Assembly: GCA_977030845.1 (NCBI GenBank)
Contig: OZ365113.1
Location: 13,888,001-13,952,000, forward strand
Reading direction: 5' to 3'
Source of the DNA: Fimbriosthenelais zetlandica
Lineage: Eukaryota
DNA: 64,000 nt
In this document: one piece after another, positions 26,383-64,000 of the stretch
How the letters are laid out: every line of letters starts with the position of its first letter
How positions within the stretch are numbered: position 1 is the first letter of the stretch
The notes under the pieces: generated by a model
Database searches by the model: none
What the model saw: only the letters and a program-made list of their open reading frames with translations
Told to the model about the DNA's origin: nothing
Program-made: the position numbers and the translations under genes

Positions 26383-27592
26383 ACGACTCAATCGTTTTTG
26401 CCAAAAGTAAAATTAAATTCTAAAATTTCTATGTACGCTGATGATACAGCTTTTGTAATTTTGGGTAAAGAGATAGACTGCTTAGCAAGGAAAATGCAGT
26501 TAGATATCAATGCTTTTCAACTCTGGTGTACGAATAATGGTCTTAAAATCAACTATAAAAAAACCATATTTCAAGTTTGCGGCACAGTACATTGTTTAAA
26601 TAAGCTTAATGACATTCCAAACCTATACTGTGGTGGTCACCAGATTACGCACAAGAAAGTTGTTAAATATCTTGGTGTGAATTTGGATAATAATTTATGT
26701 ATGAACGCTAACATCACACAAACTTTGAATAATTATTATTCAAGACTTGGTCTTTATGTGAAGCGCAGACATTTAATGAACTACGATACAGCTAAATTAA
26801 TTTTAAAAAGTTATATCCTTCCTGTAATTGAAACAAATAATATATTTAACTTTTCTGCAAATGAATTAGATGTCAAGCGTATTGACGTGGCCTTTAATAG
26901 ATCTTTGCGCTATTGTACACTCATGAATAATTACACCCCAGTTGAAACTTTATTTGATGCTGTTAAATTACAAAGACTGAATATTAGGCGTATGATAAGG
27001 CTACTATGTATTATGTTCCATTACCGTACTGATAGGTCACTACTGAAACACTCAACAATTAATGTTAGAATTTTTGATGGACCAATTTTTAATATAGAAC
27101 GATTTAAATCCACAAAATTTAAGAAAAATATTTGGTATATAGGCAGAGTAAATTGGAATAAATTACCTGCTAATATACGATTAATAGATGATTATGACCT
27201 TTTTAAATGCCGGTTAAAAGTACATTTTTCTAATGATTGAGCCTTTGGTTAGGACTTATTATTACTGCTGTAGATTTGAATTTTTTTTGTAAATTGTTTG
27301 TCTGACCTTTTTATTTTTCAAGACTTTAAGTGTGTTACAGCAGGTGTTTAAGTGTTAATAATGCAGAGATTAGTGGTTTTTATAGTCGCTGTTTTTTTTT
27401 GTTTTTTTTTTTGTTATGTTTTTAATGTGTTAGTTATTCGTATAATCAAATATAATTGTAATTTCTTTTGTATCAATTAATCAATGTATTGTATTACAAA
27501 TTTGTTAATTATATAACTATCCTGTATATTGTAAATATTGTAAACTAGGACTGCCTGAAAATACACCGTAAGGTGGAATTGGTTCAAATAAA
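26383..27592 (+). mobile_element. 5'-truncated non-LTR retrotransposon (CR1/L2-group LINE): RT C-terminal part, T-rich 3' UTR, terminal stem-loop and AATAAA
   Basis: Uninterrupted ORF 26398-27240 with MYADDT, KYLGV and C-terminal WNKLPANIR...FKCRLK; 3' UTR with T tracts at 27392-27412; AATAAA at 27587-27592. Left boundary approximate. Confidence 0.9.
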
Positions 27593-32000: not shown

Positions 32001-32841
32001 CATGGTCCATTCCCGACTAATCAAACATAGGCGCTTACAGCAAAATAGATGTTCAATTGATCGGAACTTTCCCCCCTTTTATTTTCTTCTCCAACGGCTC
32101 GGAAAGAATTATGGGCATCGCCTCGATGCCATTCAAAATATGAGGGATCTCGTACACTGTAAAAAAACATATATGGGTTATAAAAGAAGAGATTTCGAAG
32201 AGTTTCATCACAAAATCTCCCAATTATAATTATACCATGAAGATCGGAAATAATGATATTAAAACACATGTAGATGAGTACTGCATGCTGCATATAGATT
32301 ATGACGATTATAGTCTGGCATGGGGAATATACTTTTTGAATCCACACAGTGACAGGCAGGTTACTGTATGCTGGATGTAGCTGTTCACATAAAGCCTTGC
32401 CACTCAGCATCGAGGACATGTTCACCTTTTCCCCCATGCATCTCTTCATGATTTTAGGTACGAGAAGAGTGCATTAGGTTTGTATGGTTAAGTTTGGTTT
32501 TTCGGAGTGTGCTGCACATCTAATGTTGGTTCAGCAGCAGTCTAGATGCCATACAGTTCGTGATTCGCTGTACAGAAGCGTAAAATCCCAGCATAAAAAA
32601 AATGGTAGATTTGGTGTGAGCTATACATAGCGGATGCCAAATCTGTATTCAACAATAGGCCCTATATCCGCGATTTGTGACAATGAAATGCTCATGGATA
32701 AACATTATTACAACTCTCTGCACAAACCTGATAAAAATGGAAGGGGCATCAACAAACTTTAACTATTTTGATGCCAGAAAGGATGGACATCGGAAGTATA
32801 ATGCTAGAAAGTAAGTAATAAACAAGGAGGGAAGTTTTTAC

Positions 32842-33684
32842 CTGAACTCTTGAACTTGAAATGCTTGAGTGCTTCTTGGAACCTGACGACACCCCATTTG
32901 CCTTACCAGGAGTCGAAGTGATGGAGTTTTCGAATAGAATCCTTGCGATCAACCCATACAAGACACAAGTCAAAATGAGAGGAAACACATAGAATATGAA
33001 CAAGTCCGCCATGTAATATGTCAAATAGGACTTCCTCTCAAGTTTGAATGTACATTCCTCGATGGTTAAATTTCCCATATAGATCCTTCTCTTGGTGGTG
33101 GTGAGGAGAAGCCATGGTATACAGTAGCACATGCCAAAAATCCAGAGGACACAGATGATTCTCTTGGCTCGTTTCACAGTACACATAGTCTGGGCTTTCA
33201 TCGGATGGCAGATGGCAATGTAGCGCTCAATTGTAAATGCTGTGATGCTCAAAGAAGATGTGTTCACTCCAAGATACTGAAAGAAAACCATGAGTGAACA
33301 GCCTAACCAGCCTATAACACACTGGTCAATGATGATGAAAAGTTCCCAAATGGTGGGCAACGTTGCTGATATAAGAACCAGGATGTCAGCTATGGCTAAA
33401 GACACAAGGTAGCAATTGGTTGTGGTGTGCATACTCTTTGTTCTTGCCACCACGATCACTACCATCATGTTCCCACCAAGCCCTACCACAAAAATGAGAG
33501 TGACAAATAATGCCCCAACAGCCCTGTAGGCAGGGGAGTAATATTTAGGTTCGGGAAGGCTGGTGCCATTTGTCATATTATTATAGGAATCATAAGTGTT
33601 GTTAAAGTATTCTGAAAAATTAGAAGCCATTGTGACTATATTGTTCATTCCATAGGGACCTATAGTTGTACTGTCATGTATCAT
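32842..33684 (-). CDS. TRHR: Thyrotropin-releasing hormone receptor-like class A GPCR, first coding exon (N-terminus to ICL3, TM1-TM5)
   Basis: First in-frame ATG at 33684 (the track's TTG start lies downstream of an in-frame TAA). N-glycosylation sequons, GN in TM1, TNCYLVSLAIAD in TM2, YLGVNTSSLSITAFTIERYIAICHPMKAQTMCT in TM3/ICL2 (TRHR-like), TM5 DLFIFYVFPL. Ends SSSRVQ at phase-0 donor GTAAAA. Orthology is inferred from remembered motifs, not a search. Confidence 0.88.
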
Positions 33685-34408
33685 GGTAAGGGATGAGGCT
33701 CCACCTGTCTGTGTTGAAGCCACATCCAATGGGAATAATTCAATGAAGTCAGGGTCTATAGACAGGTATTATGCCACAGTGAAGAGTGGTAATTGTATCA
33801 TCCACTGTGTTGAACTTCTCAACAGGGCTCAGGTGCCAGTGATGTATCGTTCTTGTGAAACGACAGTTCTGTATCTGTCTAAATGGTGCAAATCAATCAA
33901 TGAAACTGCTTCTGACAAGGCTATTTGCAGACTAGCAAATTCAATTGATTCAATTTGTCACATTCTATTGTCAGATTTAGCACTTAGTTGGGGTATGTGT
34001 GCAGGGGAACAGGCCGTACAACAAAGTGTGAATGTGGCCAGGTCAAGGCAAACAAGTGTTGGCAGCTGTGGTTGTATAAGTGTCAACTCAGTGGTAATCC
34101 ATAATAGGAGATGTATTTGGTGTTTGCCCTGGTGGCCTTGTGGAAATACATTAATCAATTAACCACTATTGTGCGTTTAACTAATTGCACACATATTTGG
34201 AATTTTCGGTATTTGTCTGTCCAACTTCCCTCCAGGGTCCTTGGCCTCGTAGTGTCTTTATGAGCTTCTCTTCTGAGTATTTTTTATTGGTTTTACTTGA
34301 TATATATTCCGAGAAATTTGTTTTTTTCGCAATTCTCATAAACTGATTTGCTTGGCAGAAGTTGGTAGAGCAATGACTGCAGCGACAACACAAAGCATCA
34401 CCTGTTAC
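33685..34408 (-). other. TRHR: Putative 5' UTR portion of the TRHR-like exon, with upstream splice acceptor
   Basis: Strong acceptor TTTTTCTCTTTTTTTCAG ends at 34409 on the minus strand; no in-frame coding continuation upstream of 33684. Confidence 0.5.
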
Positions 34409-54805: not shown

Positions 54806-56827
54806 CTAGACACAACGTACATGTGTTTAGCAAAGAATATCAAATGATGAAATCTCAGTATTAAATGCCCACAATGTCGACATGAAGGAATTTTTCTTTC
54901 ACTTGACATATAATTTAATAAATCAATGCGTCAATAAATTTTATCAAAGTGCACGAACAATAGTTTTTGACTTACTGATGTAAATTATTTCCAGATTTTT
55001 TCAGAAGTTTTTTTAATACAATGTTGTTGTTTTGATTAATTTCTATCTGTAGGTCATAATAACGGTAAAGGTGGTACTTTCACATGCACCACCATCTGGA
55101 TAAGAGACTAAATGTCCATCATCCATTAAGACTGTGTATTGTAATGTTCATTCAGTGTGAAATAATGTTTTAAAATAGTTCACATGTAATAAATTGTCAG
55201 ATTAGTCAGAAATAAATGCGTATGAAGGAATATCCAAAGGAAACAATACCCAAATACTCAAACAAAATAGACAGTAAGACAGTGGATGTATTTCCAAATA
55301 AATTTTCCAACAGAATCCATGCTTTTCCAGCATCAATTTTGGCATATAATTAAGACTCCAGTTTGGAATCTTGACAAACTGAAAACAGTGTGAAAGGAGG
55401 AAATGAGTCAGAAAAAATAATCATAAAAATAAAGAGAACAGATACAAGATTTATGAGCCATCCTTTGAGGGCAAGTGATGAAAGCATCGACTCACTGCAC
55501 TGCCAACATTAATTATCAGAATTGGCATAATTTTGTAAAATGCGTGGTTGGCTCATAATGAAATCGAGTTGCGTATTCAGAAGGGGAGAAAGAGAAAAAA
55601 TATACCATAAAGCAAGTTTACAACAAATAAAATGAATTGCTGAGGGACAATGGTGCATGTCACCTCAAGGTAAAGGGATGAGGATGCAAAGAGAAACTTA
55701 CTCCCTTCTTTTAACTATCACATCTTAACGGGAGTACGCATGATGCTCAAGATTATTTGTCTGGCTTTCACTACTGAATTTAACAAAATTAACCAAATAT
55801 GGTTCCTAATTGAAAATAACACTGCACAAAATAAGAACAGAAAGGGGAAGGTTCTACGGAGGAGGTGGGGAGGGTGGAAGATCTCTGGGTATCAATGCAT
55901 GCCAAACAGGGAGGTAATTAATTCCAACTGGGTTCATAAAAGCCATAAGGGTGTTATCTCTGTAAATTCTAAAACCTGTCTCTTAAAGAAACGTTCACAG
56001 AGGTTATGTAAAACATAGGCCTATAACTGCTTGGCTGCAGATCTCGTGCTGTTATAGTCTGTCTGCTGGTCTATATAGGTCATGACATATCTATGGTACT
56101 CAGGTACTGTAGACTGAGCATGCAGCTTTCTACAGGTTCATTGTATGTGGTGGAATCTTTCTATATTAACTAACGACCATTATCCTATGATTCTGGTACT
56201 AATTATTCAAACAGTCCAATCCCACAACAGAGGAAGCAGGTTTCCTTTAGAAACAACCACCAGATGGCCAGGACTTGATGTTTTCGGTCATCCCCACACG
56301 GTGGAGGGAGTGTAGCTTTTCAGGACTGGAGCTTTGGTAAAGGGACGGAGGGAGTTAGTTAGGTGGGTCTCAATAAATTAATTTTCTCAGGGTGTCTATA
56401 TCGTTGGATCAGACCCTTGGCTTCACCACTACACAACATTTGGTATATAAATAATACAATTTTAACTGTGAAAATTATAAAAGTACTACCTCGAACATGT
56501 CTGAAATTGTCTTTAAAAACTTTTTCGACCTAAAAATATTGCTCTCTCTCTTTCAAATGGAATTATCACAAACCAATAATGTTGACAGAATTCCACAATT
56601 GAAAGAGTAATGCACAAAATTAACATATTTCTTTCAGCTCACTCCAACTAATTAATGCAGTATTTCAGATGCGTTTCCAATTGTGGTATGGTGAGAACCA
56701 AGTGTGGAGGGAGGAGGGAGAGAGTGTTAGGGATGATTTCTACTGTATGTTTCACCTGCTGTATATAGACATTGTAGAAGAGTATCTACAGATAAGAGAC
56801 GCAGGCGAGGGAGAGAAAGAACCTTAC

Positions 56828-56979
56828 TGTGCAGTGTCATTGTCATACTTTCGTGGACGGCCGCGCGTCAAATGTCTCCGCCTTACAAACTCTAAGTCAT
56901 CCACCATCCAAAACGATCCAAAATCATCCTCATACCTCACAAAACATTTATGTAGGGACAAATTGGTGCGTATAGCATT
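56828..56979 (-). CDS. FoxP: FoxP forkhead second-half exon B (alternative NAIRT type), phase 0/2
   Basis: 152 nt after a long polypyrimidine tract ending CGCACAG, donor GTAAGG; translates [50 protein letters not shown](Q), the motif type of the insect alternative FoxP exon and vertebrate FOXP1 exon 18b. Confidence 0.95.
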
Positions 56980-57469: not shown

Positions 57470-57625
<156 letters not shown>

Positions 57626-59996
57626 CTAACCAGACGGAACACAACATGGCAGAAGGGAAAAAAACAAGAGGGCATGCTTTAATATACCTGACTGCAGGGA
57701 CAGAATCATATACATGTAGTTTTTCAATACCCAGCACAAAACTGGATTTTGACAATTATACCATTTACCGGTAAATGAATCCTGTAGTCAAGAAAATGTC
57801 ATATACAACACCCCTGAACTTGTACTAGGAGAAGAATTTATATCTTTCGAGTCTATCACCGAATCGTTCATATTGGCAACGAAACACATTTAAGTATTTG
57901 TTTGCACCCATTTCCTTAAAGACTTACAATGCTGTGTTCAAGAGTTTGTGAAAGGAAATGTTATTGTGTATAACATTTATGAACTCTGGTAGCACGAGTT
58001 GCAGGGGTTATCCGCATAAGAAAACATAGTTTCTCTTATATATGTCTACTTCTCAAAATAATAAGAATAAGATCATTCTATTACTAATCACTACATTAGC
58101 TTGTTTAATGATAATGCTGTAAATTAAATATACGTTTAAATATTGGGATGCACTTTGATATCTCACTGAAAGAGAATATAGCTATCTATAGTCATTTTTA
58201 TCTTCCCATAAGTTGTTAACACACCCAATACCAATTCTCAGAAATGAACGGGAAAAATATTAAAATATGATAACATGAAAAGACCTCTTTTAAATTTCAA
58301 AAGATCTTCATGGAATATAATCATACATGTACAACAAAGACTAATATAGAAAAGAGTCTGATACAATATATACAAATGGAGTTTTTTAATCTTTGCATCT
58401 TGGTCTACTTTTTTTGACTGGGTTGGTATGGCTGGGGAGGCTTTAGACAGGTCTAGCATGTTGTCATGCATGTGTTGTTTGTTTGGAGTTAATGTCTGTT
58501 CCCGGACTTTTTGCATTTTATGTTTTTGTATAAACACTTTCCTTGAGTTGATCACGTGATTGCTTTGGCATCGACAAGTGCAAAAAGTGACAGTGTTTAT
58601 GGATGAGGCGGACACGAAAGGTAAAAATACTGAGGCATTTTTAAATTATCATTATCTATTTTTTGATATTTTTCTTGTAAACTTCAAGCAAAAAGGCCAA
58701 TTTTTATTTGGTAAGCAGCCTTCCATTTCGATTTGTGCAATCTTTGAGTCATATTTGTGGGACAATGCAATGAAATTTAGGGAAAATACAAGACACAAAT
58801 TTAATAATTATTGATCTAGTGGTACAACCAAAAGGAAGCATATATTAGAAGGCAGTTCATAGTTATTATGAATTACTTTGCCTCCTTTCAAGATTATGTA
58901 CGTCAATTCTTTATAAAGAATCTTAGGGCCCTCCAATGCCTTACAAAATGGCAGCTCCCAGGTTGTGGAGAGCTCTGTATATTATGGGCCAGGCATGTTT
59001 AGATACCAACAAACAACAACAAGATTAAACATAGCTGTTCTCTCTAGTGTGCACAGCCCCGATAACGCCAGCCATATTGTTTAGTGGAAAAAAAGACAAA
59101 CATTTCATATCAAGAGAGAAAAGACAGATTAAAAAAAAACGGAGAGCGTAGACAAACACCACTAAATTAGGCTGGTGCAAACTTTGGACTACATGTATAT
59201 ACATTGGGACGTGATTCCAGAATGTTGAAGGTTTCACTCCACGAAGAACATTTTAGATTTAAAATGGATCCAATGTTTTTATCAGACAGAAGATTTTGAT
59301 AATTGGGAAATGTTGAGAAAAACTGGGAAAAGCAAAAAACGAAAATATATTTCAGATGGGGGGAGTTATTTCATAAATTGGTGTAGAAGGCATTTCGTGT
59401 TGTAGAGAAATAATATACAGCCTCAAGGCAAACAACTGTTACCAGCGTCAGTCCATTAAACAACACGATGAGTAAACATACATTAATTATACATTATTTA
59501 TAGAATTCATCCTAATAAATAATAGAGTAAGCTCGGTGGAGAAGACAGCAAGGGGAAAGAGAGAGAGTTATAACTTAGAAGATAACTCTCAGAAGCAGTC
59601 TGCAGCTTGCAAGAAGCATGGAATTAGAACTAATAGAATTAGATATGCCCAAGCAAAATAGAAATAAATTTGTCAAGTTGAAACAAAGTAAAAACAAACG
59701 TTAGTATTTGGACTACTAGTCACTCATAGCCTATGTAGTCAATTGACTGTGAAGAAAACTATGTTAAGCAATAAAAAAGTAAGTAAACCAAGTAAACCCA
59801 ATATGAACGTTAAGCATCACTATATTGAAGAGCAAGACAAATTTTGAATTTAGCCTGCACAAAAATAGCTACTATTGCAGTAGTAGAATTTTTGGCACTT
59901 CTAATTTGGAGATATGTGACATGACGGAAAAGTGGAGTATCATCTTCAAAGTTCAAACTGACTTAAAGTTGTCCTCAAAAACATGAATATGACTAC

Positions 59997-60084
59997 CTTT
60001 CATGAGGCTTCATTTTGTTGAAAGTAGAGGATTATTAAAAACCACTGGTAGATTTCGTTGACGTTGGAGAGATTCTATAATAGC
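59997..60084 (-). pseudogene. FoxP: Decayed tandem duplicate of the FoxP forkhead first-half exon (pseudo-exon or poison-exon candidate)
   Basis: 88 nt between acceptor TTTTTTCTGAACAG and donor GTAGTC. Aligns to the intact exon as AIIES-[11-nt deletion]-NEIYQWF-LIIL-YF-QQNEAS*K, with a further 3-nt deletion and TGG>TGA. Read in frame from the acceptor it gives AIIESLQRQRNLPVVFNNPLLSTK* (stop at 60012-60010). Confidence 0.85.
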
Positions 60085-60378
60085 CTGTTCAGAAAAAATA
60101 TATAGCAAAGAAAGTATACTAAGCATAAAGAAGAAGTACCAACTGACTACATTAACCGAGCAGTGACTATAACTGTGTCGACCATTCATGGGCATCCTAA
60201 ATATACAGGTAAAAGAAGATTAAGAATTATTGGCCGAATTCGCCAGTGAGAATTTGGTAATTAGGATGTCCATAAGGAAGCCACAGTGAGAAGCAAAGTG
60301 AGGAGGCGGATTAGGGAAGTGGGTGAGAAGCGACATAACAACAGAGTTAGCGAACAACAATCAGGACATTCTCTATAC

Positions 60379-60480
60379 CTTCCACGTGGCCTGGTTTTTC
60401 CTGAAGAAAGCAAATGTGTTCTGGAACCACTGGTAAATTTCGTTTAATGTTAGCTGTTTCTCGGGTGACTCGATGATGGC
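60379..60480 (-). CDS. FoxP: FoxP forkhead domain, first-half exon (intact copy), phase 0/0
   Basis: 102 nt between acceptor TTTCTAG and donor GTATAG; translates [34 protein letters not shown], matching the FoxP forkhead segment (human FOXP2 has WFTRTFAYFRRNAATWK). Confidence 0.97.
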
Positions 60481-62998: not shown

Positions 62999-64000
62999 GG
63001 CCGGGCCAGTTATAAAGGCCTAGGTCTGGTCGCTCCCATCGCACGATTCAGTCGCTATTTGTTGTCCATCAAAACAGAGCATCGCACGAACTTCAAGCTT
63101 ATCACCATGGGAGAAAACTATAGAGGGGTGGGGGGAAGGGAGGGTGCGTGTGGGGTCGAGGGTTCAATCCTTGGGAGACAATAGCAAGGAATTAAATACC
63201 CGGTATTGTACCAGGTTACAAAGCCGGCTACAAGAGTAGACGTCAAGGTGGGAGGAAGGGAAGGGACTTCTTTTTATGTGGACGACGTTGACATGGACAT
63301 GTAGAACGACATAACGTCACGGCCCAGCATGACACCATGTCAACAGGGAAGGCTGCCACGGAGAGCCATGCTGATCTATGGTGCTTGGGAGATAAATATT
63401 GCATCGTCATCAGAAATTTATCCCCGCTGTCAACCAAGTGTTTACCCCGCATCGCCAGGACTAGAGGAGTGTCTGATTTTTGGTATTGTTTTCCAACTGT
63501 GAAGCATTTGGTAATACCAACCTTCCCTCCTACCTGTTCTGTAATTGTTTTCAATTCATACTCAGCATATTCTTAAATATCAATTTCACCCAATAGTCCC
63601 ATATAGTTGACAAGCCCATCTGTTATCAGGGAATGACTTCACCATATTTTATATACATTTGATCTGGTATCCCAGAGGAAAACCATTCTATTTTTTTGCC
63701 AAATACAAAATTAATTAGAAATTTCACCTAAAGATCCCAGAGGACTACCAGGCCTGTCTAATCCCTTTTGTGACGGAACAAAGGGATCAACAGCTTAATC
63801 GTATAGATGGGTTAAAACACTTTTCTAATATCCTAAAAATGGAGAGAAATATTTGCTAAAGTACTTAAAGAGATCAGTAAACGAGTGTTCTTCAATCTGT
63901 TCTCCCATCACTTGCTGACTCAAACCAAACCAATATCGCCTACTCAGAGGGCCATTGTAATTCACATTTTGGATTTAATTTACCCACATATAATATGGAT

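What the first reader, a model, noticed from the sequence alone, without database searches (positions are those of the whole stretch)
59997..60480. Duplicated first-half forkhead exon in FoxP: a decayed twin 294 nt downstream of the intact exon
Seen: an 88-nt element at 60084-59997 with a good acceptor and GT donor at positions equivalent to the intact 102-nt exon. The first five codons differ only at synonymous third positions (gcc/gct, atc/att, atc/ata, gag/gaa, tca/tct), and NEIYQWF is conserved with two more synonymous changes. It carries an 11-nt deletion, a 3-nt deletion and TGG>TGA. It keeps YF as in FOXP1/2/4 and insect FoxP, while the intact copy reads FAFFRKNQ. Inference: it evolved for a long time as a functional alternative exon and died recently. 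With exons A and B this would have given a 2x2 combinatorial forkhead domain; I am not aware of a described alternative cassette for the first half of the FoxP domain. If still spliced in, it introduces a premature stop and could act as an NMD poison exon or yield a DNA-binding-dead dimerising isoform.
Basis: partly seen in the sequence, partly recalled or inferred. Interest (0 to 1): 0.88.

Follow-up and report, generated by a model that had tools for sequence, protein, structure and literature searches.

The report
Dead twin of FoxP forkhead exon
An annelid FoxP gene carries the broken remnant of a second copy of the exon for the first half of its DNA-binding domain, and the same second copy is intact and under selection in other annelid-type DNA, so this supposedly constant half of the domain once had, and elsewhere still has, two versions.

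Summary
A minus-strand FoxP gene has an intact 102-nt exon (60480-60379) and, 294 nt downstream, an 88-nt copy (60084-59997). The copy has AG/GT at the equivalent positions, a net loss of 14 nt and TGG>TGA.

A profile built only from other species' exons hits it end to end (E 1.4e-6; next hit E 1.5).

Three metagenome contigs with the annelid-type exon (L012-L014) carry an intact 102-nt second copy with canonical splice sites. Between them it shows dN/dS 0.01-0.02 at dS about 1.

On a tree the window's decayed copy is sister to these intact copies (93/73). It shares their Y25, TTT26 and E30 and a C opening codon 28.

L008 also has a broken second copy, with a different lesion. Capitella, Owenia, Lamellibrachia, L006 and about 35 loci with the related FFRKNL-type exon have none.

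An unidentified marine animal (L001) has an independent intact pair.

The exon encodes the H2-hinge segment that governs FoxP domain swapping. Copy 2 replaces the hinge Ala with Lys.

No RNA data were available, so exclusive splicing and poison-exon use are untested. I found no paper describing this cassette. The scan noted exons A/B on this window, but not this element elsewhere.

The parts
60379..60480 (-). Intact first-half forkhead exon (copy 1), 102 nt, phase 0. It encodes the end of H1, H2 and the hinge ([34 protein letters not shown]).
   Evidence: It is 74-94% identical to exon 1 of Capitella, Owenia, Lamellibrachia, L006, L007 and L008.
60085..60378 (-). 294-nt intron between copy 1 and the decayed copy. 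It ends in a pyrimidine-rich tract followed by CAG.
   Evidence: Copy 1's flanking intron (100 nt either side) matches nothing beside the decayed copy, and the FoxP introns match none of the fetched loci.
59997..60084 (-). Decayed copy 2 (pseudoexon), 88 nt. It reads AIIES, then an 11-nt deletion, then NEIYQWF, then a net 3-nt loss, then LYFQQNEAS*K. The phase-0 stop is at 60012-60010. TGG>TGA is at 60002-60000.
59995..59996 (-). GT donor of the decayed copy (AAG|gtagtc), at the position equivalent to copy 1's donor (AAG|gtatag).
57503..57625 (-). Second-half forkhead exon A ([41 protein letters not shown]), intact.
56828..56979 (-). Second-half forkhead exon B ([46 protein letters not shown]...), intact. 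This is the known alternative partner of exon A.
   Evidence: described in Santos et al. 2011.

Best explanation
The 88-nt element is a pseudoexon. It is the dead remnant of a second, tandemly duplicated copy of the FoxP exon that encodes the end of helix H1, helix H2 and the hinge of the forkhead domain.

The duplication is old. For most of the time since, copy 2 was kept as a coding exon, most likely spliced as an alternative to copy 1. That would give forkhead domains that differ in the H2-hinge segment, which controls domain-swapped dimerisation.

In this lineage copy 2 was then disabled by deletions totalling 14 nt, a nonsense change and loss of conserved helix-2 residues. Copy 1 is now the only functional first half. 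If the pseudoexon is still recognised by the spliceosome, the transcript stops prematurely.

Shown: homology, the lesions, intact selected counterparts elsewhere, and grouping with them. Inferred: past alternative splicing, its effect on the hinge, and present silence.
For: 1. Homology beyond chance and exact boundary agreement. A profile built without window sequences hits 60084-59997 at E 1.4e-6.

2. Age and past constraint.
- Differences from copy 1 are 0/0/7 (of 12 sites at each codon position) in AIIES+NEIYQWF, and 6/6/10 of 14 each in the tail.
- Codon position 3 against positions 1-2 gives Fisher p 4e-4. The heterogeneity 0/24 against 12/28 gives p 1.6e-4.
- Third positions are as diverged as between orthologous exons of different annelids.
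- No flanking intron similarity remains.

3. Intact counterparts.
- L012, L013 and L014 each have the annelid-type copy 1, then 529-675 nt downstream a 102-nt copy 2 reading AIIESANRQLTLN(E/D)IYQWFQ(R/W)TFKYFEHNELTWK, with ag|..|gt.
- L012 against L013/L014 copy 2 gives dS about 1.0, dN 0.012-0.024 and dN/dS 0.01-0.02.

4. Orthology.
- In the ML tree the decayed copy is sister to the three intact copy 2 exons (UFBoot 93, SH-aLRT 73).
- Forcing it to group with the window's own copy 1 costs 9.4 lnL (p-AU 0.09).
- It shares with them TAC (Y) at codon 25, TTT at 26, C at the first base of codon 28 and GAR (E) at 30. All annelid-type copy 1 exons have TTY(F)/TTC/AAR, and CAR or CTN at codon 30.
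- A profile of copy 2 alone matches the 3' two-thirds of the element.

5. Lesions.
Against: - No RNA evidence of any kind, so neither past alternative use nor present silence is shown.
- The exon is only 102 nt, so tree support is moderate and a recent local duplication is not formally rejected (p-AU 0.09).
- The species behind L012-L014 and L008 are unidentified. All fetched relatives are distant, with saturated synonymous sites and unalignable introns.
- Capitella, Owenia, Lamellibrachia, L006, L007 (2 kb downstream) and about 35 FFRKNL-type loci (about 20 of them spanning the whole exon 1-exon A intron) show no second copy. An old origin therefore requires repeated loss.
- The splice signals of the pseudoexon look as good as those of copy 1, which leaves room for continued use.
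Confidence: 0.78

Rival explanations
1. The broken exon is still in use as a poison exon. It is spliced in under some conditions, introduces a premature stop (phase-0 TGA at 60012-60010), and either lowers FoxP output through nonsense-mediated decay or yields a truncated protein with zinc finger and zipper but no DNA-binding domain.
For: AG after a strong pyrimidine tract and a GT donor are kept at the homologous positions, and look no weaker than those of copy 1. Any inclusion gives a stop well upstream of later exon junctions.
Against: The retained splice signals are equally expected from a fairly short neutral phase. The broken copy in L008 has a different lesion, a 4-nt deletion at codons 14-15. 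No cross-species conservation of the broken form is seen, unlike typical conserved poison exons. There are no RNA data.
Confidence: 0.14
2. It is a lineage-specific duplicate that never functioned. A segment containing the exon was copied and has simply decayed, and the resemblance to copy 2 of other contigs is convergent.
For: The duplicate is absent from most sampled annelids. A tree joining the decayed copy to the window's own copy 1 is not formally rejected (p-AU 0.09).
Against: There are no changes at 24 first and second codon positions, while 7 of 12 third positions changed. Under neutrality from birth, with that synonymous distance, this is very unlikely. The best tree places it with the intact copy 2 exons. 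It shares Y25, TTT26, the C opening codon 28 and E30 with them. No flank similarity is left.
Confidence: 0.05
3. It is an assembly artefact. The exon is really intact and the indels and stop are sequencing errors.
For: The net 3-nt loss lies next to a T5 run, where long-read assemblies can miscount bases.
Against: An 11-nt deletion, a substitution creating TGA and several non-conservative codon changes in helix 2 are not typical assembly errors. L008 shows that broken copies occur elsewhere.
Confidence: 0.02
4. The similarity is due to chance.
For: None beyond the short length of the element.
Against: (E 1.4e-6 with an independent profile, exact boundaries, same strand, correct intron, AG/GT in register).
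Confidence: 0.01

Closest known systems
Alternative second-half forkhead exons of FoxP (Drosophila FoxP isoforms A/B; the FOXP1 counterpart), Santos et al. 2011, PMC3002244
   Same: Same gene and same domain. Both arise by tandem duplication of a forkhead-coding exon and give alternative domain halves. Both members of that known pair (exons A and B) are present and intact in this window.
   Different: That pair replaces the recognition-helix half and is bilaterian-wide. The paper treats the first-half exon as constant. Here the duplicated exon is the first half (H1 end, H2, hinge). It is seen in only some annelid-type sequences, and in this genome it is dead.
Mutually exclusive exons born by tandem exon duplication in general (Kondrashov and Koonin 2001, cited in PMC3002244; survey in PMC8373072)
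   Same: In L012-L014 and L001 the exons are adjacent and homologous, have the same length (102 nt) and phase, each has its own splice sites, and both are under purifying selection.
   Different: Exclusive use is not shown. Because 102 is a multiple of three, including both exons would not break the frame, so exclusivity would need another mechanism. In the window one member is a pseudoexon.
FoxP hinge and three-dimensional domain swapping (Pro-to-Ala at domain position 39; review PMC8508939)
   Same: The hinge alanine is codon 24 of this exon (TF-A-FF in copy 1), so the exon carries the residues said to enable domain-swapped dimers.
   Different: The natural copy 2 has Lys at this position in L012-L014 (TFKYF), Ala in L008 and Leu in the window's relic. 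The effect on swapping is inferred, not measured.
Poison exons coupled to nonsense-mediated decay (own knowledge)
   Same: Inclusion would introduce a premature stop.
   Different: Such exons are usually conserved as such across species. Here the broken state differs between the two lineages that have it, and no RNA evidence exists.

Membership tests
FoxP gene (forkhead box P) | FoxP-type forkhead domain split over exons at conserved positions (…LIRQ | AI..ATWK | [13 protein letters not shown]…) | tested here: met
   Exon 1 and exons A/B match annotated FoxP proteins (PF00250 plus PF16159) of Capitella, Owenia, Lamellibrachia, molluscs and arthropods at 74-100%.
FoxP gene (forkhead box P) | Zinc finger and leucine zipper (FOXP-CC) upstream of the forkhead domain | not testable with these tools
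   The upstream exons, including RPPFTYASLIRQ, lie beyond the window's end at 64000.
Decayed duplicated exon (pseudoexon) | Homology to a neighbouring exon beyond chance, on the same strand and in the same intron context | tested here: met
Decayed duplicated exon (pseudoexon) | Lesions that exclude a functional reading | tested here: met
   14 nt lost (length 88, which is 1 mod 3), TGA in both relevant frames, and the KQLTL core deleted.
Decayed duplicated exon (pseudoexon) | An intact orthologous exon in other species | tested here: met
   L012-L014 copy 2 is intact and selected. It groups with the relic at 93/73. Support is moderate because only 102 sites are available.
Decayed duplicated exon (pseudoexon) | Absence from mature mRNA | not testable with these tools
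   No RNA data.
Mutually exclusive exon pair | Two adjacent homologous exons of equal length and phase, both open and both with splice sites | tested here: not met
   In the window copy 2 is 88 nt and carries stops. The feature is met in L012-L014 and L001.
Mutually exclusive exon pair | Transcripts carry one exon or the other, never both | not testable with these tools
   No transcript-derived protein with copy 2 was among the 346 proteins fetched (grep).
NMD poison exon | Premature stop on inclusion | tested here: met
   TGA at 60012-60010 in phase 0.
NMD poison exon | Conservation of the stop-bearing exon across species | tested here: not met
   L008's broken copy has a different lesion. 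Other annelids have no copy or an intact one.
NMD poison exon | Regulated inclusion, with the transcript stabilised when NMD is blocked | not testable with these tools
   No RNA data.

The most novel reading that the evidence does not exclude
The duplication predates the annelid radiation. Copy 2 keeps the ancestral spiralian state (Y25, E30 and a C opening codon 28, as in mollusc FAYFRRNEATWK). The 'constant' annelid exon (FAFFRKNQ/L) is then the derived paralogue. Early annelids would have had a 2x2 modular forkhead domain: two hinge/H2 versions times two recognition-helix versions. The first-half choice was lost repeatedly, and this genome shows a lineage caught after the loss. An independent intact pair in another marine animal (L001) would make first-half switching a recurrent solution.
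Probability: 0.3. Interest if true: 0.72.

Novelty: new variant of a known kind. Interest (0 to 1): 0.58.

Why it matters
FoxP proteins are the Fox factors that dimerise by domain swapping, and the swap depends on the hinge encoded by this exon. Until now only the other half of the domain, the recognition helix, was known to be switched by alternative exons. The first half was treated as constant.

A naturally selected second version of the hinge half (Ala to Lys at the hinge, RK to EH next to it) would let one gene tune dimerisation or DNA bridging independently of sequence recognition. It would also give structural biologists natural variants to test.

The window's relic, the second broken copy in L008, the intact copies and the many lineages without a copy together show birth, maintenance and repeated death of an alternative exon within one phylum. 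For this genome's annotation, the element should be marked as a pseudoexon and not included in gene models.

Tried and rejected
- Searching the long C-terminal ORF (54171-53425) for close relatives found nothing.
- tblastn of 261 FoxP proteins against the window gave only forkhead exon hits, so the species could not be placed from the fast-evolving tail.
- Capitella, Owenia, Lamellibrachia, L006 and L007 were fetched in the hope of finding an intact copy. None has one, and none has alignable introns.
- A second protein search restricted to the exon region returned few annelids.
- The ant isoform P0262 is not on record as a gene product. The Armadillidium gene is too long to fetch.
- Words naming candidate annelid genera are absent from the scan's notes.
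- I considered that third-position skew alone could come from constraint on copy 1 only. I rejected this as sufficient, because the skew exceeds the expected factor of two and because 0/24 against 12/28 is heterogeneous.
- Chance similarity and a repeat or transposon origin were rejected, because there are no other copies in the window.

Full report
**What is there**

The window holds the 3' part of a FoxP gene on the minus strand.
[quoted passage not shown] It is 102 nt and reads [34 protein letters not shown].
- The two known alternative second-half exons follow. Exon A is 57625-57503 (NAVRH...) and exon B is 56979-56828 (NAIRT...). Both are intact.
- The upstream exon ending in LIRQ lies beyond the window.

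- There is an AG acceptor after a pyrimidine-rich tract, and a GT donor.
- The five opening codons (AIIES) differ from the intact exon only at synonymous third positions.
- NEIYQWF is kept, with two synonymous changes.
- There is an 11-nt gap within codons 6-12 and a net 3-nt loss in codons 20-24.
- The tail is LYFQQNEAS*K, with TGA for TGG.
- Read in the exon's phase, it stops at 60012-60010.

**Is it more than chance?**

Yes.
- It is the second-best tblastn hit of the exon peptide in 64 kb (E 0.001).
- It is the best non-self nucleotide match, and none of 3000 shuffles reaches its score.
- An nhmmer profile built from 28 exon sequences of other organisms, with no window sequence, matches exactly 60084-59997 over profile positions 1-102. 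The E-value is 1.4e-6, and the next hit in the window has E 1.5.

**What organism**

The window's genome looks annelid.
- The constitutive exon carries [12 protein letters not shown]. Capitella teleta, Owenia fusiformis and Lamellibrachia satsuma share this. Molluscs read FAYFRRNEATWK and arthropods F(C/A)YFRRNAATWK.
- Downstream exons (…YGESLNASLR, AALAESNLPMLNP) also match annelid FoxP.
- Earlier notes of the scan also call this genome annelid.
- So FAFFRKN is not a peculiarity of this gene. It is the general annelid state.

**Relatives without a second copy**

I fetched FoxP loci of Capitella (L003), Owenia (L004), Lamellibrachia (L005), an unnamed annelid-type contig (L006) and L007.
- In the first four, the exon 1-exon A intron is 209-706 nt and holds no second copy. 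L007 has none within 2 kb downstream.
- No intron sequence aligns with the window, so all of these are distant relatives.
- About 35 metagenome loci with the related FFRKNL-type exon show a single copy; about 20 of them span the whole exon 1-exon A intron. I presume, from memory only, that they come from oligochaete hosts.

**Relatives with a second copy**

A scan of metagenome contigs with an alignment of the exon (A1) returned 80 loci.
- Three of them carry the annelid-type copy 1 ([34 protein letters not shown]). They are L012 (JAAUXW010246445.1), L013 and L014 (both from assembly JAAUYA).
- In each, 529-675 nt downstream, there is a second, intact 102-nt exon. It reads AIIESANRQLTLN(E/D)IYQWFQ(R/W)TFKYFEHNELTWK and is flanked by ag| and |gt.
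- Between L012 and L013/L014 this copy 2 shows dS of about 1.0 and dN of 0.012-0.024, so dN/dS is 0.01-0.02. Third positions against positions 1-2 give Fisher p 5e-5. It is therefore a coding exon under strong purifying selection.
- About 400 nt of intron upstream of copy 2 is also alignable between these contigs.
- A fourth contig, L008, has the copy 1 most like the window's (94%, tied with L006). It has a second copy 365 nt downstream that reads GIIESPNGQLALN, then has a 4-nt deletion, then YQWFQNNYAY, up to the contig end. It is therefore also broken, by a different lesion.

**Is the window's relic the same exon?**

- In an ML tree of 31 exon sequences (102 sites), the relic is sister to the three intact copy 2 exons (UFBoot 93, SH-aLRT 73). 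This group, a mollusc-type exon and L008 copy 2 sit apart from a clade of 13 of the 15 annelid-type copy 1 exons (93/87); the window's own copy 1 and Owenia's are left unresolved.
- Forcing the relic to join the window's own copy 1 costs 9.4 log-likelihood units (p-AU 0.09).
- A private duplication in the L012-L014 lineage is rejected (p 0.029).
- A duplication inside annelids is not rejected (p 0.29).
- The relic shares with the intact copy 2 exons, and with the mollusc-type exon, TAC (Y) at codon 25, TTT at 26, C at the first base of codon 28 and GAR (E) at codon 30. All annelid-type copy 1 exons have F at 25, TTC at 26, AAR at 28, and CAR or CTN at 30.
- A profile of copy 2 alone matches the relic's 3' two-thirds. 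A profile of annelid copy 1 alone matches its 5' part.
- With so few sites this is moderate evidence, not proof.

**Internal evidence for a long coding life**

- Against copy 1, the relic shows no differences at first or second codon positions and 7 at third positions, out of 12 sites each, in AIIES+NEIYQWF. In the tail it shows 6/6/10 of 14.
- The third-position divergence equals that between orthologous exons of different annelids.
- Constraint on copy 1 alone could explain at most about a two-fold skew. The observed skew is larger (Fisher p 4e-4).
- The clustering of replacement changes (0/24 against 12/28, p 1.6e-4) does not fit uniform neutral decay since birth.
- Zero changes at 24 constrained sites caps the neutral phase at roughly 0.1 substitutions per site. 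So 'recently dead' holds only relative to a saturated duplication age.

**Mechanism**

- Established knowledge: FoxP forkhead domains form domain-swapped dimers, largely thanks to an alanine that replaces a conserved proline in the hinge between H2 and H4 (Pro39Ala; review PMC8508939).
- That alanine is codon 24 of this exon (TF-A-FF).
- The intact copy 2 has Lys there. It also has Y for F at codon 25, EH for RK, and E and L for Q and A further on.
- Inference: where copy 2 is alive, choosing it over copy 1 changes the hinge and helix 2, and so the dimerisation or DNA-bridging behaviour. It leaves the recognition helix to exons A/B.
- In this genome only copy 1 can give a working domain.
- The relic's splice signals look as good as those of copy 1. 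Occasional inclusion, leading to a premature stop, cannot be excluded, and no RNA data were available.

**Comparison with what is known**

- Santos et al. 2011 described tandem duplication and alternative use of the second-half exon across Bilateria, and drew the first-half exon as constant.
- A later survey of tandem exon duplications lists FOXP1 only for that event.
- The Owenia Fox gene paper and a 2025 FoxP evolution paper do not mention a first-half alternative.
- Full-text searches found no description.
- This is therefore a new variant of a known kind. It is a second site of exon duplication in the same domain, seen alive, dying and dead.

**Other duplications of the same exon**

- A Tara Oceans contig (L001) has two intact 102-nt copies 118 nt apart, each with ag|..|gt. 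The two are sisters in the tree (95/87), with pN 0.19 and pS 0.95. This is an independent event in an unidentified AT-rich animal.
- L002 has a partial tandem duplicate.
- An ant protein model and an isopod protein model carry in-frame inserts that repeat the exon's 3' end.

**Verdict**

The element in this window is a dead relic. The wider finding it led to, a selected first-half alternative exon in some annelid-type genomes, is the interesting part and needs RNA and taxon identification.

Noticed in passing
L001:649-969 (ENA ERZ976220, Tara Oceans marine metagenome contig k127_709289): Two intact tandem 102-nt first-half forkhead exons ([34 protein letters not shown] and [34 protein letters not shown]) lie 118 nt apart, each with ag|..|gt. 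They are sisters in the tree, so this is an independent duplication in an unidentified AT-rich (31% GC) animal.
   Followed up: partly
L008:1595-1665 (Ga0256913_10102881): A second copy of the exon lies 365 nt downstream of copy 1, with an apparent 4-nt deletion at codons 14-15. It is cut off by the contig end. The intron before it holds a tandem repeat of about 100 nt, present twice.
   Followed up: partly
L002:173-355 (ENA ERZ23498939 scaffold_918108): A recent partial tandem duplication covers the intron's 3' end plus the first ~51 nt of the annelid-type exon (AIVGSTDRQLTLYEIYN..., then the full exon).
   Followed up: no
P0262 (Odontomachus brunneus isoform X22) and P0272 (Armadillidium vulgare): Both protein models carry in-frame inserts between the two forkhead halves that repeat the end of the first-half exon (EESRNVGRGTFCYFRRNTATWK; NSYPNFRRNGASWK). 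This suggests partial duplicates in the same intron in arthropods. The DNA could not be fetched.
   Followed up: partly
P0151 (Panonychus citri, 1266 aa): This protein model has three FoxP-type forkhead domains. It is probably tandem FoxP gene copies fused in annotation.
   Followed up: no
L012:2555-2967 against L013:858-1214 and L014:769-1124: About 400 nt of intron just upstream of the intact copy 2 is alignable at ~70% between contigs, although synonymous sites in copy 2 are near saturation. It is possibly a conserved splicing-control region.
   Followed up: no
window 56825-56850 (minus strand): The exon B reading frame runs straight into TAA at 56827-56825. The candidate donors (after 56849 or 56828) would leave the exon at 131 or 152 nt, neither a multiple of three, unlike exon A (123 nt). 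Exon B may therefore end the coding sequence of its isoform.
   Followed up: no
L005 and L006, downstream of exon A: No exon B was detected by tblastn within 4.3 kb (Lamellibrachia) and 9.6 kb (L006) downstream of exon A. Capitella, Owenia and the window do have it.
   Followed up: no
window 26398-27240 (+) and 32749-33729 (-): There is a long ORF that may be a retroelement fragment, and a 326-aa ORF that looks like a seven-transmembrane receptor exon. Both readings are by eye only and were not searched.
   Followed up: no
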